The notes under the pieces were generated by a model, which was given only the letters and a program-made list of their open reading frames with translations, did not search any database and was not told the DNA's origin. A DNA stretch of 64,000 bases, taken from assembly GCF_006345805.1 (NCBI RefSeq), contig NC_043025.1, positions 3,162,001 through 3,226,000 of the forward strand, written 5' to 3'. This document shows, in pieces, positions 12,544-35,337 of this stretch (its first letter is position 1; the number at the start of each line of letters is the position of its first letter). This DNA comes from Octopus sinensis (taxonomy: Eukaryota). The position numbers and the translations under genes were made by a program.

Positions 12544-12600
<57 letters not shown>

Positions 12601-14116: not shown

Positions 14117-14159
<43 letters not shown>

Positions 14160-14204
14160 ACTCACACACACATACACACACACACGCACACACACGCACA
14201 CACA

Positions 14205-14995
14205 CTCAGAATCGCATATCCGGAAGAAAACCAAAACTTTCAGATAGAGACCGTCGGACTCTTACGCGAATTTTTAGAAAGGATCACAAAAGTACAGCTC
14301 CCAAAATTGCCACAGAAATTTATGACCACATCAAGCACCCGATTTCCACAAAACCTGTTTGGTGGCAGCTGCACAAAGCCGGATTTCACAGGAGGGCCGC
14401 AATCAGAAAACCGCTACTTTCAAAATCAAAAGCTGCAAAGCCTTTAGAGTGGAGTAAAAACCTACAGAATTGGTCCCTAGAGCAGTGGAAGAATGTTATT
14501 TTCTCAGACGAGTCATCCTTTACTTTATTTCCGACCAGCGGCCGAGTATGCGTGTGGAGACAGCCAAGAGAATCATTTGACCCATACTGCCTTCTTCCAA
14601 CTGTTAAACATAGAGGACTATCTGTGATGATCTGGTGAGGTATATCTTGGAAATCTGCCGGCCCAATGGTTTCCCTTCATGGTAGAATTAATAGTCAAAG
14701 CTATTTAAGCATTTTATCGCATCAAATTCAACCTATGTTTACGGAAATGTTTCTGGGGAGAAACGCAATCTTTCAGGATGATAATGCACCAATTCCCACA
14801 GGCAAAGTTGATACCGAATGGGCTGAGGAACATTCTAGTGAAGCTGAAAATCTTACCTGGCCATCACAGTCCTCAGATCGCAATATTATTGAACATTTAT
14901 GGTGCATTTTAGAAAAACAAGTAAGGAATCGATATCCTCCACCATCATCATAAGAAGCGGAGACTGTTTTAGCTGAAGAATGGACAACATTTTTA
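14205..14995 (+). mobile_element. Tc1-family transposase pseudogene, DD36E spacing
   Basis: GRKPKLS, WKNVIFSDES, TVKH..SVMIW(stop 14636-14638), FQDDNAP, WPSQSSDRNIIEHLW. There are 36 residues between D (14780) and E (14891). Confidence 0.93.
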
Positions 14996-15527
14996 GAGCT
15001 ATATCTAAGGTTATGATGGTGTGGAGCTGAATGGGAGAAAGATGGAAAGCGCTGGCCGCAAAATAACCTGCAGCCCAGAATTCGTGAGAACTGCTGCCTA
15101 GATGGTAACTCCCTGGCAAAGTTAATTGCATTCAGTGCCAAGGTTGTATGATACTGTGGAGATAAACCTAAAATATATATTGGGCAACGGAACTATCATT
15201 GAAACACCGATTTTATAAGCATAGACATTCATTGATCTGCACTTATAGAAAACGTACAGGAACAGGGGCTTCAAATAGTAGATGCAGTATGACCTTCGAG
15301 CGAAAAATTAAGAATTTTGTCTCAGCTTGTTATAGTTGGAACAAAGGAACGGAACAGTTAGCGTCTTGTATGCATGTAGCTAAGCATCCTTTGTGTAAAT
15401 ACCAGCAGTCTTCAATTTCATTCTGATTCAGAAAAAAATGTTGGCTTCAAAATATTTCCTTAATATAGGTGCATGCGTGGATAATGGACCTAAAACGAAT
15501 GAAAAACCAATACATATATACACGCGT

Positions 15528-15561
<34 letters not shown>

Positions 15562-15749
15562 GTGTATGTGTGAGTGTGTATGTGTGTATGCACTGCTGCA
15601 GGTGCCTACACACATATACACACATGCACACACGTATACACGCATCAAAATATCTTCCTTTATATTAACTGCAATACAATGTTCTTATTGACTATTAATT
15701 TGTGATAAATCTGGTGGTGGTGTTATATTAGGCAATAAATAACCCTTAC

Positions 15750-15933
15750 CAATGAAATCATTCTCGTTACATAAGCTTCCGACGCAACAACCAACACAGG
15801 AAATTCCACTGGCCCATTTAATGCATGTAAAGATATTGTCTCTCATAGCTTGAACACGTTTCCTGTATGTGCTGCAGGACTTTTCAGTCTTCAGTGTAAC
15901 ACCGTTCGTTGATAATGCGAACCGGCATACTGG
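15750..15933 (-). CDS. Displaced paralog (E4') of the second Ly6/uPAR-like exon
   Basis: ctaatattacag | PVCRFALSTNGVTLKTEKSCSTYRKRVQAMRDNIFTCIKWASGISCVGCCVGSLCNENDFI G | gtaagg. 184 bp, open, phase 0 to 1, homologous to 35449-35628. Confidence 0.8.
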
Positions 15934-17332
15934 CTGTAATATTAGATATGAAAATTATATACTACAAACACAATATATATTAGTACGACTACTGCTAACT
16001 ACTGCAACATCAACAGCAATAAGAACACTGGGGATGTTTACTATGTGAGAAAGTTTAATCACTGCTTCAAAATTTATCCAAAAGCAACAAATAAAACTGA
16101 AAACAACTTGTCGAATTGTTGAAAGTTAACAGCAGCAGAAAACCTCTGTAAAATTTATTGCCATTTACTACTTAAAAGTAATCTTTTAAATGCTTAGTGT
16201 CCAAAGCTCTCTGATCCCATATAGGTACGGCCATCAGATCACGGTCTATATCAAAACCGCATCACTTTGTCACCCACCACCAAACTTAAAATAGGTCAAA
16301 GAATCTGGGTAAAAATATATCAATTCGTCAAAATTTCTTCTTAATTGGGCAATGCACACGAGGAGTTTTTTTATAAAAAAAATTTACGAAAAATCACGCT
16401 TGCAAAACTCACCAAGAAGAGAAATTAAAACACCCTACCCAATGATGATAATTAAAAAAAATTATCAAACTGAACTCCTCAGTCCTAGCAAGAAACAGAA
16501 AATACATAAAATGGACACAAGAGAAATTTGTTTTTATTTTGCATCTATATTTTATGACCACGAAATGAAAATAGGATATACTAGAATAAAATGTGAAGAG
16601 AAAATAGCCAAGAGCGAACTGTATCATCGGATCCCAACAAACCAGCTAACTTAATAAGATAAATTCTGAAAACGAAAAATATCAGAAATTGAGAAGAATA
16701 TTTAAAGGGAAGAATGCATCACAACAAAACTACAATTAATGATTTCAACTACCTAAAAACAATAAATGCAATAGAAATGTACACCGCGAAGTTAAAAATA
16801 AGATATGTGTAGCCTTAATTTGAACCTGAAACACGTTTCTTTTAAACGAGGAAAAGTTCAGCAAGAAAATAACCAAATCTCTCAAACACACGCACCCGCA
16901 CACATACATACATACATACACACACACATACGTCCATTTCATATATTTTCTTTCAATTTATTTATAAAAATAAAATTGTTATGGATACAATTGCTTACAA
17001 AAATAGGGATTGACTTATAATTTTTTCTATGTTCATAATTAAATCGATGATTTAATGATTAAACAGAGGTCCAATAGAATAGCTCTCAGAAACATTACGT
17101 ACAAATTCGTTCTTCATAACACCTGAACCTGTTTTCTGACAATGAGGGGGATGTCAGGAAATGATCCTACAGCCGGAGGCTCCAATTGAAACAGGGGACC
17201 CAAAATGATAAGGTTGAGAAAGATTATAGTAGATTATGCCTAACAGGAAAACGATCACAGCCACATCATCCAAACAGACCGGGTGAAACCAGGCTTAGCT
17301 GCTAGTATGTATGTATATATATATATAATATA

Positions 17333-17385
<53 letters not shown>

Positions 17386-17629
17386 ATATCATAATGATAA
17401 TGTTAATGAATACATAGGGATTAATGTATAATTCCTAATAAACTCTAAGTTCTTCATATTACGTTTGAAATTTTGGAGTAACAGAATCCTTCGGTAAGTT
17501 GTGTTTTTATTTTAAATAATGTTGGTAAATAATTTTAGATTATTTATTGGTAAAATACGTATTATTATATAGTTGTTTGATATTTTATTTACTTTAGATA
17601 CATACCATTATTATTATTATTGCTATTAT

Positions 17630-18400
17630 TATTTTTATTTTTATTTTTATTTTTATTTTTATTTTTATTTTTATTTTTATTTTTATTTTTATTTTTATTT
17701 TTATTTTTATTTTTATTTTTATTTTTATTTTTATTTTTATTTTTATTTTTATAGCCTGCTTTTACTTCACTGCCGAGCGCAGCTCTGTGTACCTTGGGTA
17801 TGTGCCGTGATTTGTTGTGATGCTCTGATGGTTATTATATGGAAAGTGTTCTGTGTATGATGTGTGCAGTGCCTAGTAGTGCAATTCTCTGTATGTTATA
17901 TGTGTTTGTAAGTCCTGGTGTTTTTGTTATGTATTTGTCTGTATATTTTTTTATCATGCCTAATGCACCTACTATGATAGGAATACGTTAGCTAGTTTCT
18001 TAGGGTTCATTAGTCTAGTTTATTAGTCTATATTTATGTTATTTTCCTTCCATATTTTATATGCATGTGTTGTTGTGTTTTCATTCTTTGGGTAGAGCAC
18101 TGCTGTAAAGTAAGCGTGTAGAATAGAAATGTATTCCTCACGTGTCCATTTATGTCTTTTGGGTTTTATTTGCGGGACATGAGGAACAACGTCCGGCCCA
18201 TTATTTTGACGGTCGTCATTTTTGTAGGGTACCGGTCCGTTCATTTCTGTTGTCACATTGTTTTGCACGTGTAGTTTTTCGAACATTTTATGATATAAGT
18301 TTAAAGTACGTACTTCCCGATTGTTATTCTTGGGTTGAATAATATCGGTGTTATTCAATTTCTTTGTAGTATTTTTTTACATGGTGTTTGGGGTCGGAGA
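17630..18400 (-). mobile_element. Internally deleted R4/Dong-type LINE: N-terminal ORF fused to C-terminus, 3' UTR and (TAAAAA)n tail
   Basis: 18023-18358 encodes KRHKWTREEYISILHAYF. About 17860-17985 encodes PIIVGALGMIKK..IALLGTAHIIHRTLSI*. The hexamer tail is at 17630-17752. Confidence 0.75.
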
Positions 18401-18669
18401 TGATCTGGTGTTGATGGATCGTAATGTATCACGCATGTTTACATGTGTTGTGCTAGAGGTGGAGATGATATCGAGTTTAAATACATCATTTCGTTTCGAA
18501 AATAGTATTAAATTTCAATGAGTATTACTTACTCGGATATAGTCCAATCCTTTTTCAGTTAATTTTTGGCTCCATACGATGTCTTTGTTTTCGATCTTTG
18601 TGGATAGATTTCGGAGCACTGTTTTATCGTTCTCACATCTAAAACGTTCCCGATTATTATTATTATTAA

Positions 18670-18730
<61 letters not shown>

Positions 18731-18892
18731 CTACTATTATTATTGTAGAGCTTTGTAATTTTATTTTAAGTAATGTTGTTAATACTTTTAGATTATTTAT
18801 TATTGAAACACGTACTATTATATAGTTGTTTGAGATTTAATTTTAAGTTTAGATACGTATGTAATTTTAAGTTCAGATACGTGTGTGAGATA

Positions 18893-18946
<54 letters not shown>

Positions 18947-18964
18947 CATTATTGAGTTTATTGT

Positions 18965-19034
18965 AGACCTGAAGAGTGACTTTTTAGATTAAATAGAATT
19001 TAGTCCAAATATAGCCACGAAACGCGAGTAGTCT
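18965..19034 (+). ncRNA. Type I hammerhead ribozyme motif
   Basis: agac-CTGAAGA-gtgact..agccac-GAAA-c-gcga-GTA-gtct: stem I of 4 bp, stem II of 6 bp with one mismatch, minimal stem III with a GNRA loop, GUA cleavage triplet. Confidence 0.75.
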
Positions 19035-19168
19035 TTTAATCTTTTTTACCATTTATTGATTTGTAATTTATTGATTTTTGAATAGGGACTTTGGGATATG
19101 TTTGTTTTTCTAGATGTTTTAAGTGAATTTTTTCATGGTTGAATTTGTTTTTTTCTCTAAATTATATT

Positions 19169-19217
<49 letters not shown>

Positions 19218-19249
19218 GTATTATATATGTATATATGCATATGATATTT

Positions 19250-19450
19250 TTATAAGTGTGTGTGTTTGGATCTGTGTTTGTCCTACCACCATCATTGATT
19301 GACAACCGTGTTGGTGTGTTTGCGTCCTCGTAGCTTAACTGATTAGCAGAAGAGACAGATAAGATAAGCACCATGGGTCCATTTCAGCAACTAAAGGGCG
19401 ATGCTTTAGCATGGCCACCGTCAAATGACTAAAACAAGCAAAAGAATGAA
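19250..19450 (+). mobile_element. Octopus-type SINE
   Basis: ttgacaaccgtgttggtgtgtttgcgtcctcgtagcttaac...gactaaaacaagcaaaagaa. Reverse-complement relative of 39290-39510. Confidence 0.7.
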
Positions 19451-20105
19451 AGAATACCAGAGGAACTTTCCATACCATCAAACCAAGAAGGTTCTTTGAA
19501 TATGTACGATGTATTTTAAGGCTAAATAATAATTATGTTTACGTTTGTGGTAACGGAGATATTTTCGTTTAGTTATATAGTTGTCGGTTTTACACTTTTT
19601 CTATATTCTGTAACTGTCAGAATATAGACACATTTCTCATGACACCAACACACAATTTACATATGCTTACATTTTTTCGGTTTTCTGTGAATTTTTCATG
19701 GGTCCATTTAGTGACTGAAGTAGTTCGACGATCGAATAAGACGGAAACAGAATAATGCTTTAGTTAAGGCGTTGTATAAAGACTTCTAAAACCACAGGCC
19801 ACGCAATAGACAGACTTAGTAGTAGAATTGACTGAGCTGTGACGATACAAACTATATTTCATTTAACAAACACCAAGCAGAGTAGAAAAAAAGAAAGTAG
19901 TTGTGTTCCGGTTGACAAGAGACGACCAACAAAGTCCGGAAGACAGAAGAAGCTAAAAAGCATACACAAACACACACATATATATATATATATATACATA
20001 GATATAGATACTATAAGATATACATATAATAGATATATAGATATATATATACATACATATATATACACATATACATACATATACACTACAAAACAACATA
20101 CACAC

Positions 20106-20149
<44 letters not shown>

Positions 20150-20983
20150 ATATATATATATATATCTAATAATACTTATATACAGACAAGTAGACTATTG
20201 GCTGGGAGAGCTGGTCCACTTGAAAAAACACTTCCAATGCAACTCATCTGAGAAGAAATGCCAGCAAAACAGGGGGGTAAACTTGCAACAGACTGGCATC
20301 TCTTTAGTGGGATGTCTTCTATCCCGGGTGTTTGAATATGCTGGATACGAGAGAGACTGCGGCCTAAGGGCCTGATCTGAATAGCATGTAGAGCATATAA
20401 CTAAGAAACTACTTCAATGAAGACATTGAGGCGTGCGCAGTCTCGTGTTAGTGTAACATTGATGGAGTGAAAGTAGACATGAACGTGTAGAAGACAAATC
20501 TACGTCCGGTGTGCTTTGATTGGAATGTAGCTGTTTGTGAAATGTGATTACTTGAACAATGAAATGTTAGTTGAATGACCTGATAATACTAATTAGATAA
20601 ATGATCGTAAATCTAATCAACATGATACATTTTTGCAGTTTTAACATTTTAGTGGAATGTTTTTTAAAATAACAAACGGAATCAACGCCCCTTCTGCGGT
20701 GGTATTTGATCTTAGTCTGCGGTATTACAGTATTTCATCTAGAAAACGAACGGTAGCAACAGATCAGATTTAATCCTTTAATTAACAATTTTAAAGCTTA
20801 CATTGATTACATTAAATTTGCAAGAAGATATAATATCAATATAATTTCAAATCATGCATTATTTTCTGTTTCAAGCCATAGTGAGGCCTGAAAACTTGTG
20901 GAAATTACATTATGGTGGATTATAAGTCTCATGCATGCATAGTGTTGTATTGAAAGGTACAATTATAGTGTCGTTACAAGGTA

Positions 20984-21150
20984 AAAATATTTCATATTAT
21001 ATATGGAGAAAATATTATTTTATATTATATAAGCAGAAAATTAATTTTATATCATTTATGAAGAAAATATTATTTCATATTATATATGGAGAAAATTTTA
21101 TTTTGTATTATATATGCAGAAAATATCATTTTATATCATAAAATATCATC
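20984..21150. repeat. ~26-bp minisatellite
   Basis: Repeated unit gaaaatattattttatattatatatg(g/c)a, about 6 copies. Confidence 0.8.
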
Positions 21151-21186
21151 AAAGACGATTCTTGGAGGCTCTTTTTCGATTTTCAC

Positions 21187-21239
21187 TTAGAAGTTTGTTT
21201 CTGCTGCTCTATCCTCTGTTCCATTACCAGTACTTGAAC
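21187..21239 (-). CDS. Candidate terminal coding exon (xSSTGNGTEDRAAETNF*)
   Basis: Acceptor ttttttcattatgtttccag. The phase-1 frame is open to TAA at 21187-21189 and is phase-compatible with both E10 and E8'. There is no paralog in the window to confirm it. Confidence 0.45.
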
Positions 21240-21439
21240 CTGGAAACATAATGAAAAAACATAAAATATAAAATTTTAAGCACATTAATTACCGTATAAT
21301 ATTAATTTGTATATATATGTTTATTTCTTACTATTTGAACTGTTAGAGCTGTTTTCTCTATGTATCCAGTACAACCCTTAAACAATAGATCAGCGTATTT
21401 CAGTTTGTTACTTATTCACGAATATACCATGAATGACGA

Positions 21440-21720
21440 TGCCTTTCACGTTACTTCAGCCAATTGACAAGCGCTGATGGAAGAACTGTTCTGCTTTTAG
21501 ACAAACACACTGTCAACACAAAGGTCACATCCTGTTTACATGTAGGAACACTTTCTTAAAATCTATCTGTACATCTTGAAAATGGCCAGCGTGTATATTT
21601 CATAGAAGACAATGCTCGAAACGTAGATCTGAATCCATGAGAAATTACTTTGATAGCTTTCTTCAAATTATGCCAATGTGATCTGTTTGCCCGAACACTG
21701 TTGTACGTAGAGATCCCCGT
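21440..21720 (+). mobile_element. Helitron Rep/helicase fragment
   Basis: LSVHLENGQRVYFIEDNA..P*EITLIAFFKLCQCDLFARTLLYVEIP matches the conserved Helitron segment VHLENGQRVYF..TTLTAFF.LC..D.FA.TLLY.E.P. Confidence 0.8.
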
Positions 21721-22248
21721 GAACTCTACCTAGCAACACATATATATATGCACACATATATTTACATTTTTTTTTAAATAATAAATTAAATGACCATCCC
21801 GAAACATGTGTGTGTATATGTATCTATATTTTTACATTTTCTCAAGCAATATATAATTTGTTACGATGTTTGACTAGTAAAAATTCTACTGTCTGTTTCG
21901 CGGCCTCTATTGTTGCATTTCGTCAATATTGACCAATACTTAGACATACTGACCGGATGCGCATAAACCTCATTTATGCCGGAAATAGATAGACTTTATA
22001 ATGGTTTGTCAGTGGTAAAATGAAATGAATGGAAACAAAGTGAAAAAAATTATATCATTGTTCAGCAATGGGATATGCTTTGTTCCTCTTGTATATCTCT
22101 TAGAGATGAGTTAAAGCGTATAAGCTGTGTGTGTATCTATCGTTCCTTATTCAAAAATTAACATGATCACTTCGAACAAAATGAAATTCCGCTGAGGAAA
22201 ATTATTTGCAGCACTAAATATTTTTCCTGTTTAAATTAAAGCAAGTAC

Positions 22249-22296
22249 TGGAATTGTGTGAATTATTCTGCCCACTAGAGTCTGCATCTTCTACTT
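22249..22296 (-). CDS. Duplicated exon E8'
   Basis: ttattttgtatag | (K)VEDADSSGQNNSHNS | gtactt. 48 bp, phase 1 to 1. Confidence 0.7.
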
Positions 22297-22637
22297 CTAT
22301 ACAAAATAAGAAGAAAACATGTTTGCCCTCGGTTAATTAGTATAATTAAAAAGAAAATGAGCAAACACAAACAGTTCCGTAGGGACAAGAAACGGAAAAG
22401 CGCAAAATAAAATGCTGATTTATTGAAATTATCCAAGCTTTGAGAAAATGTAAATAAATAGTTGTATGTATGAGAAGGAGGGGAGAGCCTGTGTGCTTGC
22501 GTGCGCGAGTGCGTGTCCTAAGGTATCAGCCATTGTAGGTGATGATGACGACGATGATGAAGAGGATGGTAATGGTGATTGATGAAGCTAATTATGACGG
22601 TAATGGTGATAGAAATAAGAAGAAACAAGATACTTAC

Positions 22638-22741
22638 TTTCATCAAGGAATTTCGTGTGACTTTTCTGGACTCCTAAGTTAAGGAATGCCTGGGATTTGT
22701 TCAAAACTTGGGAGATTTTGCGCCGCAGTTCACTTTGAACA
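22638..22741 (-). CDS. Duplicated, 5'-shortened exon E7'
   Basis: atttctttaag | VQSELRRKISQVLNKSQAFLNLGVQKSHTKFLDE | gtaagt. 104 bp, phase 2 to 1. Confidence 0.7.
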
Positions 22742-23106
22742 CTTAAAGAAATTAATTGTTTTATTTCAATTATTTTTACATTCAAATATAGCATAGGATT
22801 CGGTCATCATAGTTAAAATAACAGCATTCAGCATGGTTGAAAACAGAATTAGCGAAGAAGGCTAGAACTACAAGCGGGTGACTAAAAGTTGGCCTTAAGA
22901 ACATATTCGTCCAGTACCGTGAGTTGCCCTCTTTAGCATGTAAGAAATCCACATGGTGGTCTGCTCTCCGTGTATAATATTTTATAAACAATTCATATAT
23001 ATATATATGTAATTTCCTGGTTGGTTTTAAATTGCTGATAACAACCTTAATTTATATATACACACTCATATATATATATATGTGTGTGTGTATATATATA
23101 TATATA

Positions 23107-23141
<35 letters not shown>

Positions 23142-23184
23142 GTACATATATATATACGTTCTTATATGTAAGTATATCGTATGT

Positions 23185-23225
<41 letters not shown>

Positions 23226-23248
23226 TGTATTTATTTACTTTTTTCCGA

Positions 23249-23316
23249 GTATATTCCACTGATGAAGACACACCATTTCTTATGCAGAGTCAGAAATCCG
23301 GAATCTAGAATTATAC
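23249..23316 (+). ncRNA. Type I hammerhead ribozyme motif in a ~280-bp element inside (TA)n
   Basis: gtatattcca-CTGATGA-agac..gtca-GAAA-tccgga-ATC-tagaattatac: extended stem I, palindromic stem III, AUC triplet, A.A mismatch closing stem II. Confidence 0.65.
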
Positions 23317-23509
23317 AGTAATTTTTTGCTAGTTTATTTTGTCTCTTCGTCTTCTCTCAAGTTAAGTTTTGACTGCTATTTCCGGCGTGGTGGTATCTCT
23401 TGGATACACTATATTATAATTTCAAATAAGGTTTTTGAAAGGTTTTTATTCCCATACTGGCCACCTGATAAAATAGGTATTTAAATATCGATCTTATCCT
23501 TATATATAT

Positions 23510-23556
<47 letters not shown>

Positions 23557-23868
23557 ATGTATGTGTGTATGTGTGTATGTGTGTGTGTATGCATGTATAT
23601 ATATATATGTATATATGTATAGATGTATATAAAGGTATGTATATATACATACACAGTTCTCTCTGTATATTTATATGGGTTTGTTTGTCGTTTGTATAAT
23701 AAAACTTTGAGAAAACACTTAAACATTTCATTGAATTATGAATTAGTATATTGTGGGTCACAAGTACAACACTGTTGATTATTGTGATATATAATACATA
23801 CGATAAAATCGAACGTTTTGAACAAAACCAAATAAATTTGAATAAATGTGTTAGAAGCTTTTGCTTAC

Positions 23869-23921
23869 CCAGGATATTCAACTCTGAATTTTCCAGTCAC
23901 GGTCAAAAACTCATGCTCCAT
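23869..23921 (-). CDS. Duplicated exon E6'
   Basis: ggcttttgcag | MEHEFLTVTGKFRVEYP(G) | gtaagc. 53 bp, phase 0 to 2. Confidence 0.78.
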
Positions 23922-24057
23922 CTGCAAAAGCCGGATGTATATATATATATATATAAGTTCAGCAAAAATTTAGATTCAAATCAATATGGTACTTAATTTA
24001 GATGCACCAGAATTCTGTATGGTATTATCCATAAAAAGCCGTGGGGTGATTATAATC

Positions 24058-24201
24058 AAAATAAGCAGCAAGAATGACTCCGGTAATTTGGTATGATCAT
24101 TTCGTACTACATCATTTTATCAAATGTTACAACATTTAATAAAATGATGTAGTAAGAAACGATCGTACCAAATTACCGGAGTCATTCTTGCTGCTTATTT
24201 T
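24058..24201. repeat. Near-perfect 144-bp palindrome (about 71-bp arms, 2-nt loop)
   Basis: aaaataagcagcaagaatgactccggtaatttgg...aaatgtt-ac-aacattt...ccaaattaccggagtcattcttgctgcttatttt, with about 4 mismatches. Confidence 0.9.
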
Positions 24202-24594
24202 TAGTATATATATATATAAATTAAATTCAAGGAACAAAGTTTGATTTAAAAGCGTTGAGATGTATTGAAAGATAGGGATAGGAAATAATTTCATTTTCAA
24301 ATCAGGATAATGATAATATAGTGTGAACAGAATAAAATATCCATATTTTGCGGCTAAGCAGTGAGACTGAAGCTCACATCCCTGTGATTACGCGTCAAGT
24401 GCTTTACCATTAGGCTAAACTGCCCGAACGACAATTCTGCTGCAAATTTAGGATATATAAATCTAACTTTAGAAATTGCTTAATCACAGGGATGTGAGTT
24501 CGAGGCTCATGACAGGTCGCCGACAGTTTTTATCCTGTTCATGCTATATCATTAACATTATACTGCGTTTGAGAAAAAATTATTTTCTCATCTG

Positions 24595-24679
<85 letters not shown>

Positions 24680-24922
24680 AATCGAATAGTAAAATTTTTA
24701 AGAGTAGAACATTAAAAATAAAAATAACAAAAGACAAGAGGACGTGTGCATGTAATATATTAGATGGACGCTCGGTAAAGTGGAGGAAAAGAAAGGGTTT
24801 TTAACGTTCCGAGCATAGCTCTTTGTCAGAAAAGAAAACAGAAAAGTTGAGAGAAGGAAAATATTACCAAAATGAAGTGTGTGGTTACATATGTACATAT
24901 GCGTGTGTGCGTGTCCGAGCAC

Positions 24923-24999
<77 letters not shown>

Positions 25000-25954
25000 G
25001 ACAAGATTAATGAATAATTGAGTGGGATTTCATTTACTGTCACAATCGGAAATTATATCACGGAATATATAAATGATGTTCATTGTGTGGACTTCTTTTA
25101 AAGACAAAATAGTGGATCGAACAGTCTTTTTATTGACCAGCAAAAATTCGGTGAGTAAAAAAGATTTTTTATGTAATAATTTACTATCAGTAAATGGAGT
25201 TGATTGTCTGAATTTCATGAAACCCAAATACAATTAATTCGCATTCCTTTACTACGGTCTACTGCATGTTCATGTCTCAGTATATTTACATGTCTGTATA
25301 AAAGTCTATATATACTTACATGCATACAAATTATGAACATATGGATTGCATTTGATTGTCAATGTTCAGTCCACAGCAGAACGAAGGTCTCAGCATACTC
25401 TCTATACCAACCCTGTCTGATGTGGAGGCCGTGTTTTGACCTCGAGAGTATACTAGTTCGATGAACCTAACAGATCACACTAGCTCAACGAAGCTTGGCA
25501 GTGGAGTAAATACTCATACAGAGGCGTAGTAAAAACGATTAAAGGATGAAAGGCAAAGTCGGCTGTGGTAGAATTTGAATTCAAAATATAAAATTACCGC
25601 TTATCATTTTGCCCGGCGTACAAACGATTTTTCCAGCTCGCCGCAGAATATGTAGGGAATCAAATGATAAATGAATACGCATATAATACTTAATTGTACA
25701 TTTGAATTTAATATGTATTTACATATATGTATGTATTTATGTGTTTAAGCTGATCAGGCTAAACTTTAAAATACCTGTTGTCATTTAACAAAATCGATAT
25801 CACTATCCACTAAACGTATTGAGGTCACTATTTAAATTGACGTTTTGCTTTTCTCCTCTAAAATATGTATGTATGTGTATGCATGTGTGCGCGTGGTCAG
25901 TGCGTGTGTATGTGTGAGTGTGCGGAGAAAGAGAGAGGGCAGATATCTACTCAC

Positions 25955-26037
25955 GGCTCTTGATACGTTCCCAGCAGGGATTTTACGTTCGTTGAACATT
26001 TTTAAAATCAAACGAAATGCGAAGGATTTGGTCCAGC
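25955..26037 (-). CDS. Duplicated exon E5'
   Basis: caatccatag | (G)WTKSFAFRLILKMFNERKIPAGNVSRA | gtgagt. 83 bp, phase 1 to 0. Confidence 0.78.
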
Positions 26038-26157
26038 CTATGGATTGATATAGAAAATAATCACTGCGTTTATAAATGAGACACACGTCATAGATGCACA
26101 CAAAACCCACATACGTAGATAAAAATACACAATCATAATCACAACTACACTTAAAAA

Positions 26158-26212
<55 letters not shown>

Positions 26213-26217
26213 TATCT

Positions 26218-26340
26218 GACGGGATTCTTTCAGTTTCCGTTAACCAAATCCATTCAAAAGGATTTGTTTGGCCCGAGGCTATAGTAGAAAACACTTACCC
26301 AAAGTGCCACGCATTGGGACTGAACCCGTAACCATGTGGT
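26218..26340 (-). mobile_element. Octopus-type SINE fragment
   Basis: tttcagtttccgttaaccaaatcc..cccgaggctatagtagaaaacacttacccaaagtgccacgc..gggactgaacc. Same family as 39550-39870. Confidence 0.8.
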
Positions 26341-26520
26341 AGCTTCTCCTCAGTCCACTTTAGTTTTGCAGCTTCATACCGAACTATTGCGACTGCGTGC
26401 AAGTTTATCGCCGAAATTATGTTTCTGACGTTCAGCTTTCAAACCCATATTTTGCTCACTCGCCAAAAGTGCTCTCTTTTACTCTTTTCCTTCGTGTCGT
26501 GGTGTTTGATTCCGTGTGTA

Positions 26521-26566
<46 letters not shown>

Positions 26567-26679
26567 TGTGGGAGAGAGAACATTGTAAACGATGAATAAA
26601 ATGAACATGAAATAACTAAATCGTGTAAATAAAAGGGCATAATCAAAGGAACAATACAGGTTTCAAATAGTGGTACGTG

Positions 26680-26870
26680 ACCAGCAGATTCGGTGTAGGG
26701 GTGAAGTTGATTACATTGACCCAGAGCTCAACTTGCGCTTATTTTATCGACACAGAAATTATGAAAAGCAAAGTCAATCTCGGCGGAATTTGAACTCAGA
26801 ACGTAAAGACGGACGAAATAATGCAAAGCATTTCTCCCGGACTACTAACGATTCTGCCAGCTTACCGCCT
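26680..26870 (-). mobile_element. tRNA-derived SINE
   Basis: aaagtcaatctcggcggaatttgaactcagaacgtaaagac...gattctgccagcttaccgcc, the reverse complement of the 28241 family. Confidence 0.8.
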
Positions 26871-26980
26871 AATTTAAGGATTAATATTGTTAAACAGACA
26901 GAAAATCACTCACAAAAATTACTTCTCATCCTGCTACTTCTACTACTGTAAAAGTCATTCAAAAACATTTGCTCACTCAC

Positions 26981-27150
26981 CAACATCAATGCCTTTGCTT
27001 TCGATATCCTTTAGTCCTTGAGTGGTCTGTTCTGCATTGCAACATTGAGACATGTCTGGTTCTTGCCAGATACCAGTAAACGGTGAACACTTTTGTGATG
27101 ACAAGTTTTGACTTGATGCCATTTCTGGATGCCCCATCGTTCTGGAAGAA
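26981..27150 (-). CDS. Adhesion-GPCR-like gene exon E10 (second half of HRM domain)
   Basis: atttattttttcag | (C)SSRTMGHPEMASSQNLSSQKCSPFTGIWQEPDMSQCCNAEQTTQGLKDIESKGIDV G | gtgagt. 170 bp, phase 2 to 1. Confidence 0.88.
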
Positions 27151-28240
27151 CTGAAAAAATAAATGTTAAATATTGTCAGTCGAGTTTATTCATTCTTCGG
27201 AGAATTTCATCAGTCTCAGAGGAATATAGGAAACCTTCGATCTGGTCGTGATTTGAACTCATAATTTAGTGAAAGAAGGATAACTGGTGTCTTGCATTTA
27301 GGGAAGAAATCTATAATTTACTCCTGACCCCTATCCTCAAACGTAATGTCAAATATCTTCTAACTAGAGTTCAGATATAAAAACAATATTCCTGCATCTG
27401 CTTTTATTTACAATAATTTGTTGTTTTTATGATTATTCAATACAAGATTAGTTGGAACGGTGTAGGTGATGCAATATTAAGGAACCAGGTTGTTAGTTCA
27501 AGTTAAATGGGGGAATTAGTTGCTAATATTTCGCCACCATAGACATCGGTAGCAACAGCGGCAGCAATGGATTTATGTATATTTTCCTACATATGCACAG
27601 ATTTGAGTGATTCCACCAGTTGGTCTTGTCTTAAAACTAATAAAGCTCAGCCTCTGGGAGGAACAATTTAGATGCTTAACCTGTGGAGTGACGTGGTAGA
27701 AATGAGAGAAGAGAGACCGTGTAACATAGTCTGTGATGAGTGAAATCCCAGGATGACCATCATGTACTAGCAAGATATATAGCTCTACAGTAATCATAAA
27801 ATTGAATAAATAGTATTAGCCTGAAACCAACAGAATCACCGATAGATTCTATTGGCTGTATCTAGGTATGTGCTTTCTTTCCTACAATTATTTTGTGAAA
27901 TTCTTAGAAGAATCTTTAAATCTTTGTATAATACTGATTTCAAATTTTGGAATAAGGCTAGATATTTTGGGATTACATAGATCGCCAGTGGTTAATTGGT
28001 ATTTATTTTATCAATCCGGAAAGGATGAAGGACAAAGTCGACCCTGGTGGCATTTGATCTCAGAATGTAAAGTCGGAAAAATGCTGCTGAGCATTTTGTC
28101 CGGTGCCATAACGATTCTGCCAGCTCTCCACCATAAAGACTTGTCTAATATTGGTTTCAAATTTTGGCACAATGCCAGCAATTTCAGGGGAAGGGATGAG
28201 TCGTTTACACCAACCCCAGTGCTCAATTGGTTTTTATTTC

Positions 28241-28473
28241 AACGGCGAGTTGGCAGAAACGTTAGCACGCCAGGCGAAATGCTTAGTGGGATTTCGTCTG
28301 CGTTACGTTGTGAGTTCAAATTCCGCCGAGGTCGACTTTGCCTTTCATCCTTTCGGGGTCGATAAATTAAGTACCAGTTACGCACTGGGGTCGATGTAAT
28401 CGACTTAATACCTATGTCTGTCCTTGTTTGTCCCCTCTGTGTTTAGCTCCTTGTGGGTAATAAAGAAATAGGT
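28241..28473 (+). mobile_element. Full-length octopus-type tRNA-derived SINE, in a cluster with partial copies at 27980-28130, 28145-28240 and 28475-28545
   Basis: ggcgagttggcagaaacgttagcacgccaggcgaaatgcttag...gagttcaaattccgccgaggtcgactttgcctttcatcctttcggggtcgataaattaagtaccag. Confidence 0.9.
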
Positions 28474-28795
28474 ATTTATTTCAACGACCTGAGAAAAAAT
28501 TAAACGCAAAGTCGACCTTAGCGGAATTTGAACTCAGAACATAAAAACCAATGAAATGAAAGCTTTGTATAATATTGGCGACAAAGCAAATCTAGGTAAT
28601 TAGGACAAGGCTAAATTATATCAAATAATGTATAAAATGTAAAAATGGTGGGACAAGAGATTGCAACCGATGGACGTTTAATTCAATCGTGTTAATCTAT
28701 AAAGCTGTTATCTGCTCTACCAAGTAACATTCTCTCACAATAGGATGGCGCTGAAAGCTTCAAACTTTGAGTAGACATAAATAATAGAAACGAAC

Positions 28796-28907
28796 CAATG
28801 CCTTGTGGCTACATTTCCATGACATGGGATCTCTGCAGTAGTTCCTATTTTTGTCATTGGCCAAGAGAAAGTTCCATCGTTAGTTGATGTGCTTTCATCA
28901 CAAAACA
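28796..28907 (-). CDS. Adhesion-GPCR-like gene exon E9 (first half of HRM domain)
   Basis: ccttatttttcag | FCDESTSTNDGTFSWPMTKIGTTAEIPCHGNVATRH(C) | gttcgt. 112 bp, phase 1 to 2, with the C..G.F.WP.T..G..A..PC...ATR.C HRM signature. Confidence 0.92.
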
Positions 28908-28943
28908 CTGAAAAATAAGGAAAATATGGACATGAGAGAAGCC

Positions 28944-29788: not shown

Positions 29789-30338
29789 GTGTATATATGT
29801 ATATATGTATATATATATATGTATGTATGTATGTATGCTTCTAAATATATATTTACTTATATATTCTTGAAAAATTATAAATAAATTGCCATCCCGAAAT
29901 AGAGGTGTGTGTATATGTATATATATTTTTATATTTTCTCAAGCAATATATAACTGGTTACGGGTTATGACTAGTCAGAATGCTTGTCTGTTTCGCGCCC
30001 ACTATTGTTGCATTTCGTCAATATATTGATCACTCTTTAGACATACTGACCGGAAGAACAAAACCTAATGTATGCTATAAATAGGCAGATGTTATATTGA
30101 TTTGGCGGTGGTTAAATGAAATGAATGGAAACGAAGTGAAAATATAACATTGTTCGGCAATGGGATATACTTTGTTCCTCTTGTATATCTCTTAGACATT
30201 GGTTAAAGCGTATAAGCTGTGTGTATCTATCGATCCTAATGTAAAAATTAACTTGATCACTTCGTACGAAATGAATTTTCGCTGAGGAAAATTATTTGCA
30301 ACACTAAATATTTTTCCTGTTTGAATTAAAGCAAGTAC

Positions 30339-30386
30339 TGGAATTGTGTGAATTGTTCTGCCCAGTAGAGTCTGCCTCTTCTACTT
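30339..30386 (-). CDS. Adhesion-GPCR-like gene exon E8 (Ser/Asn-rich linker)
   Basis: cttatttcgtatag | (K)VEEADSTGQNNSHNS | gtactt. 48 bp, phase 1 to 1. Differences from E8' are conservative (D/E, S/T, one synonymous). Confidence 0.75.
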
Positions 30387-30680
30387 CTATACGAAATAAG
30401 AAAACATTTTTGCCCTCGGTTAATTAGTATAATTAAAAAGAAACTGAACAAGAACTGAAGTGCAAAATAAAATGCTGATTTATTGAAATCATCCAAGCTT
30501 CGAGAAAATGTAAATAAATAGTTGTGTGTGAGAGGGGGGAGTCTGTGTGTGTGTGTGTCCATGTGCGCGCGTGCGTGTTCTATGGTATCATCCACTGTGG
30601 TTGATGATGACGACAACGATGAAGAGGATGGTAATTATGACGGTAATGATGGCAAAAATAAAAAGAAACACAATACTTAC

Positions 30681-30835
30681 TTTCGTCAATGAATTTCATG
30701 TGGCTTTGCCTAACTCCTATGTTAAGCAATGCCTGGGATTTGTTCAAAACTTCGGAGATATTGCGCCGCAGTTGACTTTCAGTCATTTCGCTAAATACTG
30801 TACAGTAAATAGCAAATATTTTACTTCTGTCTGAG
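30681..30835 (-). CDS. Adhesion-GPCR-like gene exon E7 (SEA-like)
   Basis: atttttatttcag | (G)SDRSKIFAIYCTVFSEMTESQLRRNISEVLNKSQALLNIGVRQSHMKFIDE | gtaagt. 155 bp, phase 2 to 1. Confidence 0.87.
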
Positions 30836-30917
30836 CTGAAATAAAAATAAATACATACATGTATGTCGGTATGTATGTATGTAGAAACTAGCTAGATAGA
30901 TAGAAATATACATACAT

Positions 30918-30971
<54 letters not shown>

Positions 30972-31486
30972 TCGTTTAAAAGCCGCCCTATTGAACCTTG
31001 AGCCCAACAATGACACCATGCAATGAGTAAATATTAAATTTCATGAAACCTGAACAATATTTTTCAAGCAATGAACAATTTTTATCAAAGCAATGATATA
31101 ATTTGTCGACTTGGATCTTATTGCAAAGCTACATGTTAAACAACAGTACCACCACCATCGCCACCATATCTGCCATACACACGCCATCCAGACTTCTGAC
31201 GCCATCACCATCAATACTTTTCATCACGTTCCCCTCCACCACCATCACCACTGTCTTTCACATCGTTTTCTATCACTATATTCAAATATAGCTTAGGATT
31301 GGATCATCACAGCTAAAATAAGCGCATTCAGTATGGTTTAGAACAGAATTAGTGAAGAAGACTAGAACTACTCGCGGGTGATTAAAAGTTGGCCTTAAGA
31401 AGATATTCGTCCACTAAGAAATCCACATGATGGTCTTCTATCAATGTATAAATTTTTGTATTCACTTTATATATGCATATATATAT

Positions 31487-31539
<53 letters not shown>

Positions 31540-31697
31540 TATATAATTTCCTCGTTGGTTTTAAATTGCGTGTTAGCAACCTTAAATATTTTATAATCTT
31601 CACATTGCCATTTTGTGAAATCAATCACTCATTCTTATGGCATTCTCAGTGATATTGACAGGCGGGAGTTAGCCTCCACCAGCCGTAATGGAGTGAG

Positions 31698-31748
31698 CAT
31701 TGCTGATGAGTATTAACTTCCTATAAGAAATTACCATGCTAATCTAAT
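31698..31748 (+). ncRNA. Degenerate hammerhead motif
   Basis: attg-CTGATGA-gtat..ataa-GAAA-tta-ccatgc-taa-TC-taat, enclosed by outer helices ctcca/tggag and ccgtaa/ttacgg. Stem II closes G.A. Confidence 0.45.
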
Positions 31749-32260
31749 CCATCTCGCTTACGGTGGAGAATGTTATCCCCACTTTCAATGCAAAGAGACC
31801 ATATGTCTTTTTGTGGCTAAGGAGTCTATGACTAATATTTCTAACAATGCACTCTTTTCACACTTAGTGACTGTAAATTATTTCCTTGTTGGTTTCAAAT
31901 TGCCGATGGCCACCTCAATTTATATATATAGACACCCATATATGTGTGTGTATATATATGTGTGTATATATATGTGTGTATGTATATGTATGTATATATA
32001 TATATACACATATATATACAACAATTTAGTAAATGAAACATATGCATACATACATATATGTACATACCTACATCTATATGTATATACACAGGCATATATG
32101 AGTACAGGACACCACAAATAAACGTAGAACACAACGAGAAACGAAAACATAAGAACAAAACAAGGAAACGGACATTTTTAACAACGAAAAAACAGAGTAC
32201 AAGACAAACAATACAAGGAACATTCGCCTTTTTCAGCTGTCCCTGTTTCGACTCAACGCG

Positions 32261-32303
<43 letters not shown>

Positions 32304-32309
32304 ATGTGT

Positions 32310-32403
<94 letters not shown>

Positions 32404-32434
32404 TATATATATACATGTATATATATATGTATAT

Positions 32435-32466
<32 letters not shown>

Positions 32467-32477
32467 CATATATATAT

Positions 32478-32508
<31 letters not shown>

Positions 32509-32755
32509 CATATATATTATATATATATATATATACATATATACAAGTATATATATAGTTCTCTCTGTATCTTTATATGGGTTTGTTTGTCTTTTGTATA
32601 ATAAAACATTGATAAACACTTAAACATTTCCTTGAATATATGAATTAGTATATGTGGGTCACTGTTGATTATTGTGACGTATAATACATGCGATAAAATC
32701 GAATGTTTGGAACAAAAGGAAATAAATTTGAATAAATGTGCTAGTATTTGCTTAC

Positions 32756-32808
32756 CCACAGTCTTCAACTCTGAATGTTCCCGTAACGGTTGAAAGGTCA
32801 CGCTCCAT
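32756..32808 (-). CDS. Adhesion-GPCR-like gene exon E6 (SEA-like)
   Basis: ggcttttgcag | MERDLSTVTGTFRVEDC(G) | gtaagc. 53 bp, phase 0 to 2. Confidence 0.85.
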
Positions 32809-32826
32809 CTGCAAAAGCCGGATATG

Positions 32827-32893
<67 letters not shown>

Positions 32894-33453
32894 ATACATA
32901 CATTAAATTCAAGAAACAAAGTTTGATTTAAAAGCGTTGAGATGTATTGAAAAATAGATAAAGAAATAATTTTATTCTCAAACGCAGGATGATGCTAATG
33001 ATATAACATGAACCGGATGAAATATCCATAATTTGCAGAAAAGTCTGTCGGCGGCCAGCTATATGACTACAACTCACACCCCTGTGATTACGCTTTAAGT
33101 GCTTTACCATTAAGCTGAACTGCGCGAACGACAAATACTTCTGCAAATTTAGGCTATATATACATCTAGCTTTATAAGACGCGTTATCTGGCTGCCGAAA
33201 GAGTTTTCGGCAACAGGTGAATAGTTTATCCTGTTCATACTATGCTATTAGCATTATTCTGCGTTTCAGAGTATAATTATATATAAATATATTAGCTTGA
33301 CACTCGGTAAAGTGGGGGAAATGAGAGGGATTTTAATGTTCCGAGCATATCTCTTGTCAGAAAGGAAAACGAAAATGTTGAGAGAAGAAAAATATTACCA
33401 AAAGGAAGTGTGTGATTACATATGTTCTTGTGTGTGCGAGTGTGTGCGAGTGT

Positions 33454-33516
<63 letters not shown>

Positions 33517-33883
33517 CACAAGATCAGTGAATATTTGAGTAGGATTTTATTTACTGTCAGAATCGGAAATTATATCACGGAATATATAAAGACAAAATAG
33601 TGGATAGAACAGTCTTTTTAATGACCAGTAAAAATTCAGTAAGTTAAAGAAGAAAGTTTTATGTAATAGTTTGCTCTCAGTAAATGGAGTTGATTGTCTG
33701 AATTTCATGAAACCTCACTATATATTTGACGTTTCACATTTCTTCTATAATATATGCATGTGTGTGTATGTGTGCGTGAGTGTGTGTATGTGTATGCATG
33801 TGTGCGCATGGTCAGTGCATGTGTGTGCGCGCACGCGTGTCTGTGTGCGGAGAAAGAGAGAGAGAGGGCAGATATCTACTCAC

Positions 33884-34355: not shown

Positions 34356-34388
<33 letters not shown>

Positions 34389-35303: not shown

Positions 35304-35337
<34 letters not shown>

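What the first reader, a model, noticed from the sequence alone, without database searches (positions are those of the whole stretch)
15620..26590. Circularly permuted duplication of exons E4-E8
In the source the transcription order is A' (36480-35335, containing E4) then B' (35285-29860, E5-E8). In the copy the order is reversed: B (26590-21760) comes first and A (16830-15620) last. The upper end of B and the lower end of A both map to the same ~50-bp TA/CA microsatellite at 35285-35340 in the source. Complementary breakpoints with swapped order are what re-integration of a circular DNA intermediate would give. The alternative is one internally deleted period of a tandem gene array. The insertion point is only about 400 bp downstream of E10.
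Basis: partly seen in the sequence, partly recalled or inferred. Interest (0 to 1): 0.7.

Follow-up and report, generated by a model that had tools for sequence, protein, structure and literature searches.

The report
Decayed tandem receptor-gene array, not a circle
The two swapped blocks are real, but they are leftovers of separate copies in a tandem array of octopus adhesion-receptor genes, one of them now coding sequence, so this is ordinary gene-family evolution and not re-insertion of a DNA circle.

Summary
A (15630-16841) matches 35334-36498. B (21776-26590) matches 29872-35286. Both are on the same strand, in swapped order, with their ends meeting at the microsatellite at 35287-35334.

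The circle reading fails on four counts.
1. B is coding sequence of the same minus-strand gene, an octopus "adhesion GPCR G6-like" gene. The Octopus vulgaris models P0007/P0038 splice E10 into three B exons and a terminal exon at 21237-21190.
2. The B'/B arrangement occurs in three other loci from two species, so it predates these loci.
3. Neither block stops at the microsatellite. B runs 50 bp further, into intron-4 sequence that paralogues keep and this window's source copy lacks. A runs through the microsatellite for another 145 bp, matching intron 4 of a different paralogue, the full-length receptor in L006.
4. A is about 0.22 substitutions per site from every A' copy, and part of it is 96% identical to L006. 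B is 0.12-0.20 from B'.

The terminal exon and 3' flank match the last exon and flank of the full-length receptor gene. Best reading: a decayed tandem array. B plus the terminal exon are the remains of a second gene copy fused behind E10. A is an orphan exon-4 relic of another copy.

The parts
35334..36541 (-). Block A' ('source'): 3' part of intron 3, exon E4' (35628-35449) and the start of intron 4. E4' has four 1-bp deletions relative to all paralogous copies.
35287..35334 (.). TA/CA microsatellite in intron 4 where A' and B' abut. Sequence that A and B carry beside it, and that other paralogues keep in intron 4, is absent here.
29872..35286 (-). Block B' ('source'): three exons of a beta-alpha-beta-beta-alpha-beta module (33970-33881, 32808-32755, 30834-30682) with their introns.
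26976..28908 (-). Exons E9 (28908-28798) and E10 (27149-26976), which together form a hormone-receptor (HRM) domain. E10 ends at a GTGAGT splice donor.
21776..26640 (-). Block B: second copy of the module. Its exons 26038-25952, 23921-23868 and 22740-22636 are used in the annotated O. vulgaris mRNAs P0007/P0038.
26690..26875 (.). Short repeat, SINE-like by my reading, with other copies at 7308-7534, 27971-28129, 28244-28472 and 41807-41959. It lies between E10 and the start of B.
21187..21237 (-). Terminal coding exon (SSTGNGTEDRAAETNF, then stop) of the truncated gene. It is homologous to the last exon of the full-length receptor gene in L006.
17984..21186 (-). 3' flank of the gene, i.e. most of the 'gap' between B and A. 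It is colinear with the 3' flanks of paralogous genes in L001, L002 and L004 and with the 5'-side flank of L003. Its 20193-21032 part also matches the 3' flank of L006.
15365..16887 (-). Block A: orphan fragment holding the end of intron 3, an intact E4 (15933-15750), the microsatellite (15510-15645) and 145 bp of intron 4 beyond it. 16050-15833 is 96% identical to the O. sinensis full-length receptor locus L006.
14150..14950 (+). Decayed Tc1/mariner transposase (HTH_Tnp_Tc3_2 and DDE_3), next to the lower end of A.

Best explanation
The window holds part of a tandem array of octopus-specific adhesion-GPCR-G6-like genes on the minus strand. Their layout is LRR exons, an E3-E4 cysteine module, an E5-E8 alpha/beta module, an HRM domain, then GAIN, 7TM and a C-terminal exon.

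In an ancestor of one subfamily, non-allelic recombination or deletion between neighbouring copies joined intron 10 of one gene to intron 4 of the next (inferred). A further internal deletion removed HRM, GAIN and 7TM of that second copy (inferred). The result is a truncated gene: LRR, E3-E4, module, HRM, second module (B), C-terminal exon. It has no transmembrane part, so it presumably encodes a secreted ectodomain-like protein.

Shown: B's exons are spliced into annotated mRNAs, the arrangement occurs in several loci of two species, and the terminal exon is homologous to the last exon of a full-length receptor gene. The order and mechanism of the deletions are inferred.

A is a separate, more diverged orphan fragment of the exon-4 region of another array member, of the type found in L006. 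It sits in the intergenic stretch before the next gene. B followed by A is simply the order expected from consecutive decayed periods. The apparent shared breakpoint arises because this window's own intron 4 now lacks the sequence that once lay beside the microsatellite.
For: 1. The gene is identified. E9+E10 hit Pfam HRM (27.2 bits against a cut-off of 26.2). O. vulgaris P0007/P0038, named 'adhesion G-protein coupled receptor G6-like isoform X2', map exon by exon to the window. Those two proteins are 86-100% identical to the window outside E4 and the LRR repeat exons. After E10 they continue into 26038-25952, 23921-23868 (100%), 22740-22636 (100%) and 21237-21190 (100%).
2. Eight proteins of O. 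vulgaris and O. sinensis carry the terminal-exon motif, and most of them also show a second E5/E6 motif behind the HRM.
3. L001 (O. sinensis), L002 and L004 (O. vulgaris) are colinear with the window and carry both B' and B. In a neighbour-joining tree the B copies and the B' copies form separate clades, each with 99% bootstrap.
4. The E10|B junction region (26433-26893) is contiguous in L002.
5. 21275-21109 and 21032-20193 match the last exon and 3' flank of the full-length receptor gene in L006. The P0056 C-terminus ...DKATETNI compares with the window's ...DRAAETNF.
6. B extends to 26640 against L001 82946 and L003 74971.
7. A aligns to L006 from 16132 to 15365, through the microsatellite. 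15509-15365 is 83% identical to L006 and has no counterpart in any A' copy. 16050-15833 is 96% identical to L006 against 84-87% for the A' copies.
8. The first 33 residues of A's E4 match P0056 at 32 of 33 positions, against 26 of 33 for the source type.
9. A is 0.21-0.23 from every A' copy, while the A' copies differ among themselves by 0.02-0.09. B is 0.12-0.20 from B'.
10. The array context is visible. An ORF at 11798-11652 and its duplicate at 4930-4733 contain the first 20 residues of P0040. P0007, P0157 and P0004 have neighbouring accessions on one O. vulgaris chromosome. Tandem clusters of octopus-specific adhesion GPCRs are reported in PMC6408891.
Against: No locus preserving the intermediate state (two intact neighbouring genes before fusion) was found.

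No DNA homology links 21275-21776 to any intron, so the second deletion junction is not defined.

E9/E10 remnants are absent behind B. That fits deletion but does not prove it.

Whether paralogous loci also carry an A-like relic could not be seen. The 10-kb flanks of L001, L002 and L004 end too early or are interrupted by repeats, and L005 shows none within 10 kb.

Gene conversion is evident in this family (W_A' is closer to L001_A' than L002_A' is), so the relative ages from distances are soft.

The true orthologous locus (the P0007 gene) could not be fetched.
Confidence: 0.75

Rival explanations
1. Reader's model. A single segment A'B' was excised as a circle, opened at the intron-4 microsatellite and re-integrated about 400 bp downstream of E10, giving the permuted order B...A.
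For: Within the window the order is permuted and both outer ends map to the microsatellite at 35287-35334. Block ends coincide with microsatellites more often than chance would give.
Against: There is no circle junction. A's upper end and B's lower end are 4.85 kb apart, and that stretch holds the conserved terminal exon and 3' flank shared with paralogues and with L006. Both blocks continue beyond the supposed opening point, into intron-4 sequence of paralogues. A and B differ in divergence and in nearest relatives. B is shared by several loci in two species.
Confidence: 0.03
2. A replication-based complex rearrangement (serial template switching of the FoSTeS/MMBIR type, stalled at microsatellites) in the subfamily ancestor copied B, and separately A, from paralogous templates into the region behind E10.
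For: All detectable block ends lie at or next to microsatellites. The blocks come from different templates, as template switching allows.
Against: The terminal exon and its flank are homologous to the 3' end of a full-length gene, in the order expected of an array period. Deletion within an array explains this without extra switches. A is clearly more diverged than B. No microhomology junctions could be defined, because the ends are eroded.
Confidence: 0.1
3. Two unrelated dispersed duplications. B was copied from B' of the same gene as an intragenic exon-block duplication. A was inserted later, as a small segmental copy from a P0158-like gene.
For: Exon-block duplications are frequent in the family. 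The E3-E4 unit is triplicated in L003, and the E4 motif occurs twice in P0039 and three times in P0042. A's flank 16940-17295 has no homologue in any fetched locus.
Against: In the largest (E8) segment B is no closer to this gene's B' (0.146) than to the single module of L003 (0.085). The terminal exon's homology to a receptor 3' end argues that a whole gene tail came with B.
Confidence: 0.1
4. Assembly artefact: a mis-join or a collapsed or expanded repeat creates the odd order.
For: E4' in A' carries four 1-bp deletions within its 180 bp, plus a fifth just inside the adjoining intron. Three of the four exon deletions, and the intron one, lie in runs of two to four identical bases. This hints at locally poor consensus. 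The region is rich in microsatellites.
Against: The B'-E9-E10-B-terminal exon order is reproduced in three other loci from two independent assemblies and in annotated gene models. A is about 20% diverged from every other copy, so it cannot be a misplaced duplicate read pile.
Confidence: 0.02

Closest known systems
Fusion genes from unequal crossing-over or deletion in tandem arrays (haemoglobin Lepore type, opsin hybrids). Cited from general knowledge, not tested here.
   Same: Same-orientation tandem paralogues. The product has the 5' part of one copy (LRR to HRM) joined inside an intron to a 3' part of another copy (module exons plus last exon). The arrangement was then inherited by descendant paralogues.
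   Different: The junctions lie in non-equivalent introns (intron 10 to intron 4), so the product gains a repeated module instead of being a simple hybrid. A second internal deletion is needed. The intermediate state was not observed.
Octopus-specific tandem expansion of adhesion GPCRs with LRR N-termini (group 3 of PMC6408891)
   Same: The proteins here include members with LRR, GPS and 7tm_2 domains. Both studies deal with Octopus species. PMC6408891 reports tandem clusters of octopus GPCRs.
   Different: That paper worked on O. bimaculoides and C. minor. It did not describe truncated, 7TM-less members with a second module behind the HRM. Membership of this locus in that exact group was not tested.
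Vertebrate ADGRG6/GPR126 ectodomain (CUB-PTX-SEA-HormR-GAIN). Cited from general knowledge.
   Same: An alpha/beta module lies directly in front of an HRM domain, followed in full-length members by GAIN/GPS and 7TM. NCBI names these proteins 'G6-like'.
   Different: The N-terminus is LRR plus a cysteine-rich E3-E4 module, not CUB-PTX. Pfam SEA is not hit, and Foldseek gives only generic ferredoxin-like matches.
Duplicative translocation through circular intermediates (cattle KIT 'colour-sided' alleles). Cited from general knowledge.
   Same: The two blocks appear in permuted order relative to a contiguous source.
   Different: There is no head-to-tail fusion junction. The ends are not complementary once paralogues are compared. 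The two blocks differ in age and donor.

Membership tests
Circle-mediated (circularly permuted) duplication | The copy contains the fusion of the two ends of the source segment (head-to-tail junction). | tested here: not met
   A's upper end (16887, matching 36541) and B's lower end (21776, matching 29872) are 4.85 kb apart. That interval holds the terminal exon 21237-21190 and a 3' flank conserved in L001, L002, L004 and L006.
Circle-mediated (circularly permuted) duplication | The two outer ends of the copy map to one single point of the source (complementary breakpoints). | tested here: not met
   This holds only against the window's own source. B continues to 26640 (matching L001 82946 and L003 74971). 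A continues through the microsatellite to 15365 (matching L006 42321).
Circle-mediated (circularly permuted) duplication | Both halves have the same age and the same donor. | tested here: not met
   A is 0.21-0.23 from all A' copies and 96% identical to L006 over 218 bp. B is 0.12-0.20 from B' and clusters with the B copies of other loci.
Circle-mediated (circularly permuted) duplication | An empty target site exists in relatives that lack the event. | tested here: inconclusive
   All reachable relatives already carry B. The position of A lies beyond, or is interrupted in, the 10-kb flanks. L005 shows no A within 10 kb.
Tandem-array fusion or decay (unequal crossover or deletion) | Same-orientation tandem paralogues at the locus. 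| tested here: met
   An ORF at 11798-11652 and its duplicate at 4930-4733, both on the minus strand, contain the first 20 residues of P0040. P0007, P0157 and P0004 have neighbouring accessions on one chromosome.
Tandem-array fusion or decay (unequal crossover or deletion) | The distal part of the fused gene is homologous to the distal part of a complete family member, in the right order. | tested here: met
   The B exons are followed by a terminal exon and flank that match the last exon and flank of the L006 gene. The C-terminal peptides are similar.
Tandem-array fusion or decay (unequal crossover or deletion) | An intermediate or reciprocal product is observed. | not tested
   No such locus was among the six fetched. 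Octopus genomes cannot be scanned with the tools at hand.
Adhesion GPCR (class B2) | GAIN/GPS and 7TM are encoded by this gene. | tested here: not met
   P0007/P0038 stop at 21187 without GPS or 7tm_2. Full-length relatives (P0053, P0056) have both. The window's gene is a truncated, 7TM-less relative.
SEA domain | A sequence or structural match to SEA. | tested here: inconclusive
   Pfam gives no SEA hit. The AlphaFold model (pLDDT 88) has beta-alpha-beta-beta-alpha-beta topology. Foldseek against the PDB returns only generic ferredoxin-like folds with E >= 4e-3.

The most novel reading that the evidence does not exclude
The orphan exon-4 fragment A may not be inert. Its 218-bp tract at 96% identity to the full-length receptor locus L006, set in flanks of about 80% identity, suggests ongoing gene conversion between an intergenic relic exon and a functional receptor paralogue. 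Decayed array periods would then act as a reservoir of sequence variants for the ligand-facing cysteine module. Separately, an ancient circle-type or replicative event at the origin of the subfamily, since eroded, is not strictly excluded.
Probability: 0.2. Interest if true: 0.4.

Novelty: new member of a known kind. Interest (0 to 1): 0.2.

Why it matters
The finding removes a candidate case of circle-mediated duplication. It also shows how the pattern can be mimicked: two neighbouring decayed periods of a tandem array, plus loss of sequence at a microsatellite in the reference copy, look like complementary breakpoints.

On the positive side, it documents how an octopus-specific adhesion-GPCR family makes 7TM-less proteins, presumably secreted, with an extra module, by fusing neighbouring gene copies. 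That bears on the evolution of cephalopod receptor repertoires. It is ordinary in mechanism.

Tried and rejected
- Pfam on concatenated minus-strand ORFs of A'/B' gave nothing beyond a weak HRM hit. Exons were found only after homologues were fetched.
- The first protein search, with a spliced E9+E10 query, found one protein.
- I tested whether the terminal exon is a decayed E9. There is no DNA similarity above shuffled controls, so I rejected the idea.
- I looked for E9/E10 or other relic exons in 13800-21200. Only A's E4 and the terminal exon appear.
- I first read L003's three E3-E4 units as ending at the microsatellite. I withdrew this, because L003 carries further shared sequence after each microsatellite.
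- Look-ups of P0007, P0038, P0039, P0055, P0060 and P0056 found no record, so the true orthologous locus was not seen.
- L005 never reached the script folder. It was searched with patterns and sequence-only models instead.
- A search for a protein containing A's E4 found nothing.
- Single-sequence structure prediction of module-HRM-module was useless (pLDDT 41).
- The long ORFs at 1082-3116 and 42228-42770 gave no Pfam hit.
Full report
OBSERVATION. A (15630-16604 and 16647-16841) matches 35334-36290 and 36306-36498 at 81% and 78% identity. A colinear chain B (21776-26590) matches 29872-35286 at 80-90%. Everything is on the same strand. In the "source" the two blocks are contiguous as B' then A' on the + strand. 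In the "copy" A lies 4.85 kb to the left of B. Direct reading shows that B diverges from the source exactly where the TA/CA microsatellite 35287-35334 begins. A's similarity starts at the other edge of that microsatellite, and A has its own microsatellite at 15510-15645. The other two block ends also lie at microsatellites. Microsatellites cover 9.8% of 14-40 kb, and 16% of positions lie within 25 bp of one. Four ends at microsatellites is therefore more than chance. It is also what fast-evolving repeats do to any alignment.

THE GENE. E9 (28908-28798) and E10 (27149-26976), joined, reach the Pfam gathering score for the hormone-receptor domain HRM (27.2 bits against 26.2). A full HMMER search with the one close homologue found (P0001), followed by a search with P0007, shows a large Octopus vulgaris / O. 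sinensis family. NCBI names its members "adhesion G-protein coupled receptor G6-like". Full-length members such as P0053 and P0056/P0158 have LRRs, a cysteine-rich E3-E4 module (CC..LCN motif), the E5-E8 module, HRM, GAIN/GPS and 7tm_2.

The O. vulgaris proteins P0007 and P0038 (CAI9744517/8) map exon by exon to the window's minus strand:
- 24-residue LRR exons in the purine-rich tandem repeat at 48-64 kb
- 45600-45529, 40499-40344 and 37689-37582
- E4 in A'
- 33970-33881, 32808-32755 and 30834-30682 in B'
- E9 and E10

After E10 the models continue into 26038-25952, 23921-23868 (100% identical), 22740-22636 (100%) and a terminal exon at 21237-21190 (100%), followed by a stop. E10 ends at a GTGAGT donor.

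Three things follow. The "copy" B is coding sequence of the same gene, a second module behind the HRM. The "gap" between B and A holds the gene's last exon. The gene has no GAIN or 7TM part.

With an alignment of 20 family members the module folds confidently (pLDDT 88) as beta-alpha-beta-beta-alpha-beta. It sits where vertebrate ADGRG6 has its SEA domain (from general knowledge). Neither Pfam nor Foldseek (generic ferredoxin-like hits only) shows SEA membership.

THE ARRANGEMENT PREDATES THESE LOCI. Eight proteins from the two species carry the terminal-exon motif, and most of them also show a second E5/E6 motif after the HRM. I fetched six loci:
- L001: O. sinensis, the P0040 gene
- L002: O. 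vulgaris, the P0045 gene, 92-97% identical to L001 over their shared 3' flank, which I take as orthology
- L003: O. vulgaris, the P0051 gene, a paralogue with a GPS domain
- L004 and L005: O. vulgaris, the P0047 and P0046 genes
- L006: O. sinensis, the P0158/P0056 gene, a full-length receptor

The window is a colinear paralogue of L001, L002 and L004, at roughly 85-93% identity. All three have B', E9, E10, B, the terminal exon and the same 3' flank in the same order. In a neighbour-joining tree of three concatenated B segments, the B copies of the window, L001 and L002 form one clade and the B' copies another, each with 99% bootstrap. The stretch around the E10|B junction (26433-26893) is contiguous in L002. 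B was therefore placed behind E10 once, before these loci separated.

THE ENDS ARE NOT COMPLEMENTARY. Against L001 and L003, B's similarity does not stop at 26590. It runs on to 26640 (L001 82946-83239 at 84% and L003 74971-75243 at 79%). Those 50 bp lie directly upstream of the B'-homologous sequence in L001 and L003, and they are missing from the B' side of the window and of L002. L001 and L003 also share several hundred to about 1500 bp of further colinear intron-4 sequence between the microsatellite and B'. L001 has a LINE-like reverse-transcriptase insertion on top of that.

On the other side, A aligns to L006 from 16132 to 15365 (83% over 771 columns). That alignment runs through a microsatellite at the same position and continues for 145 bp (15509-15365). 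Over those 145 bp A is 83% identical to L006, and no A' copy has a counterpart.

Both blocks thus continue into intron-4 sequence that the window's own source copy lacks. The shared breakpoint is a property of the reference copy, not of the duplicated blocks.

A AND B DIFFER IN AGE AND RELATIVES. A is 0.21-0.23 (K2P) from every A' copy in four loci, while those copies differ among themselves by 0.02-0.09. B is 0.12-0.20 from B'. Same-type copies in different loci differ by about 0.07-0.17, depending on the segment. The A region does not evolve faster than the B region by the between-locus yardstick. On that yardstick A is roughly twice as old. Gene conversion is evident in the family, so this is soft evidence.

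The sharper result concerns relatives. The tract 16050-15833 (end of intron 3 and the first half of E4) is 96% identical to L006, against 84-87% for the A' copies. The first 33 residues of A's E4 match P0056 at 32 of 33 positions, against 26 of 33 for the source type. The P0056-type gene of O. vulgaris (P0157, CAI9744521) has an accession only three away from P0007/P0038, on the same chromosome.

A's E4 (15933-15750) is an intact 184-nt exon with AG and GT, but with a Cys-to-Arg change. No protein in the database contains it. No other relic exon lies between 21190 and 13800.

WHAT THE 3' END IS. 21275-21109 (82%) and 21032-20193 (75%) match the last exon and 3' flank of the full-length receptor gene in L006, at 75142-75311 and 75279-76135, where that gene ends at 75233. 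The peptides end ...DKATETNI (P0056) and ...DRAAETNF (window). The terminal exon is not a decayed E9.

MOST LIKELY HISTORY. The following steps are inferred unless marked otherwise. Same-orientation receptor genes stood in tandem. The array context itself is shown: an ORF at 11798-11652, with a duplicate at 4930-4733, contains the first 20 residues of P0040. Tandem clusters of octopus-specific adhesion GPCRs are described in PMC6408891.

A deletion or unequal exchange joined intron 10 of one gene to intron 4 of the next. A second deletion removed that copy's HRM, GAIN and 7TM exons, leaving its module exons and last exon. The product, LRR, E3-E4, module, HRM, module, tail, was then multiplied by further gene duplication.

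A is what is left of the exon-4 region of another array member. It is bounded below by a decayed Tc1/mariner element (HTH_Tnp_Tc3_2 and DDE_3 hits at 14150-14950). B from one period followed by E4 from another is the natural order in such an array. I put it at about 0.75.

RIVALS. A single re-integrated circle: about 0.03. It fails on the junction, on the ends and on the ages. Replication-based template switching at microsatellites: about 0.1. Two unrelated dispersed duplications: about 0.1. Assembly artefact: about 0.02, because the order is reproduced in two other assemblies and A is 20% diverged from everything else.

LIMITS. The true orthologue (the P0007 locus) could not be fetched. The 10-kb flanks of L001, L002 and L004 stop short of where A would lie. 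L005 shows neither A nor A's upstream flank within 10 kb. No pre-fusion locus was seen. The source species of the window was not determined.

VERDICT. The circle interpretation is not supported. The feature is an ordinary, if instructive, product of tandem-array evolution in a known expanded octopus receptor family. Interest 0.2.

Noticed in passing
window 35628-35449 (exon E4' in A'): Exon E4' carries four single-base deletions relative to all six other copies, and a fifth lies just inside the adjoining intron. Three of the four exon deletions, and the intron one, lie in runs of two to four identical bases. Either this exon is dead in this genome or the consensus is locally poor. The O. vulgaris model P0007 has an intact E4.
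   Followed up: partly
window 48000-64000: This is a purine-rich tandem repeat (GC skew up to 0.68) with units up to 95-97% identical. Embedded 72-bp exons each encode one 24-residue leucine-rich repeat of the same gene (for example 53426-53355, 55629-55558, 61402-61331). The number of LRRs therefore probably varies through repeat-unit gain and loss. P0038 has three more LRRs than P0007.
   Followed up: partly
window 16050-15833 against L006 41735-41952: A 218-bp tract of the orphan block A is 96% identical to the O. sinensis full-length receptor locus, while its flanks are about 80% identical. This looks like a gene-conversion patch between a relic exon and a functional paralogue.
   Followed up: partly
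window 1-6851 against 9858-13789: This is a roughly 4-7 kb direct duplication at 92-99% identity. Each copy holds an ORF containing the first 20 residues of P0040, at 4930-4733 and 11798-11652 (minus strand). Similar units occur several times upstream of the gene in L001. It is probably the duplicated 5' region of the next gene in the array.
   Followed up: partly
L003 55545-70015; proteins P0039 and P0042: The E3-E4 (cysteine-rich, CC..LCN) unit is tandemly triplicated in the O. vulgaris P0051 gene. The E4 motif occurs twice in P0039 and three times in P0042. Exon-block duplication is common in this family.
   Followed up: partly
L001 77118-82995 against L002 42137-42223: The O. sinensis locus has about 5.9 kb in intron 4 that its apparent O. 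vulgaris orthologue lacks. It includes a LINE-like reverse-transcriptase ORF and a PTYL-type minisatellite. Parts of it are shared with the paralogue L003, so presence or absence in this intron does not follow the locus tree. Ectopic exchange is one possible cause.
   Followed up: partly
window 14150-14950 (+) and 13786-14056: A decayed Tc1/mariner transposase (Pfam HTH_Tnp_Tc3_2, DDE_3) lies next to block A. Beside it is a 116-nt inverted repeat at 13786-13901 / 13941-14056, 94% complementary.
   Followed up: partly
window 1082-3116 (+) and 42228-42770 (+): These long ORFs look like retroelement remnants to my eye. They gave no Pfam hit at E <= 0.001.
   Followed up: partly
L006 82974-85233: Downstream of the full-length receptor gene in O. 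sinensis, on the opposite strand, lies the 3' end (flank, terminal exon and end of B) of a truncated family member, 91% identical to window 20184-22136. The two genes are therefore tail to tail there.
   Followed up: no
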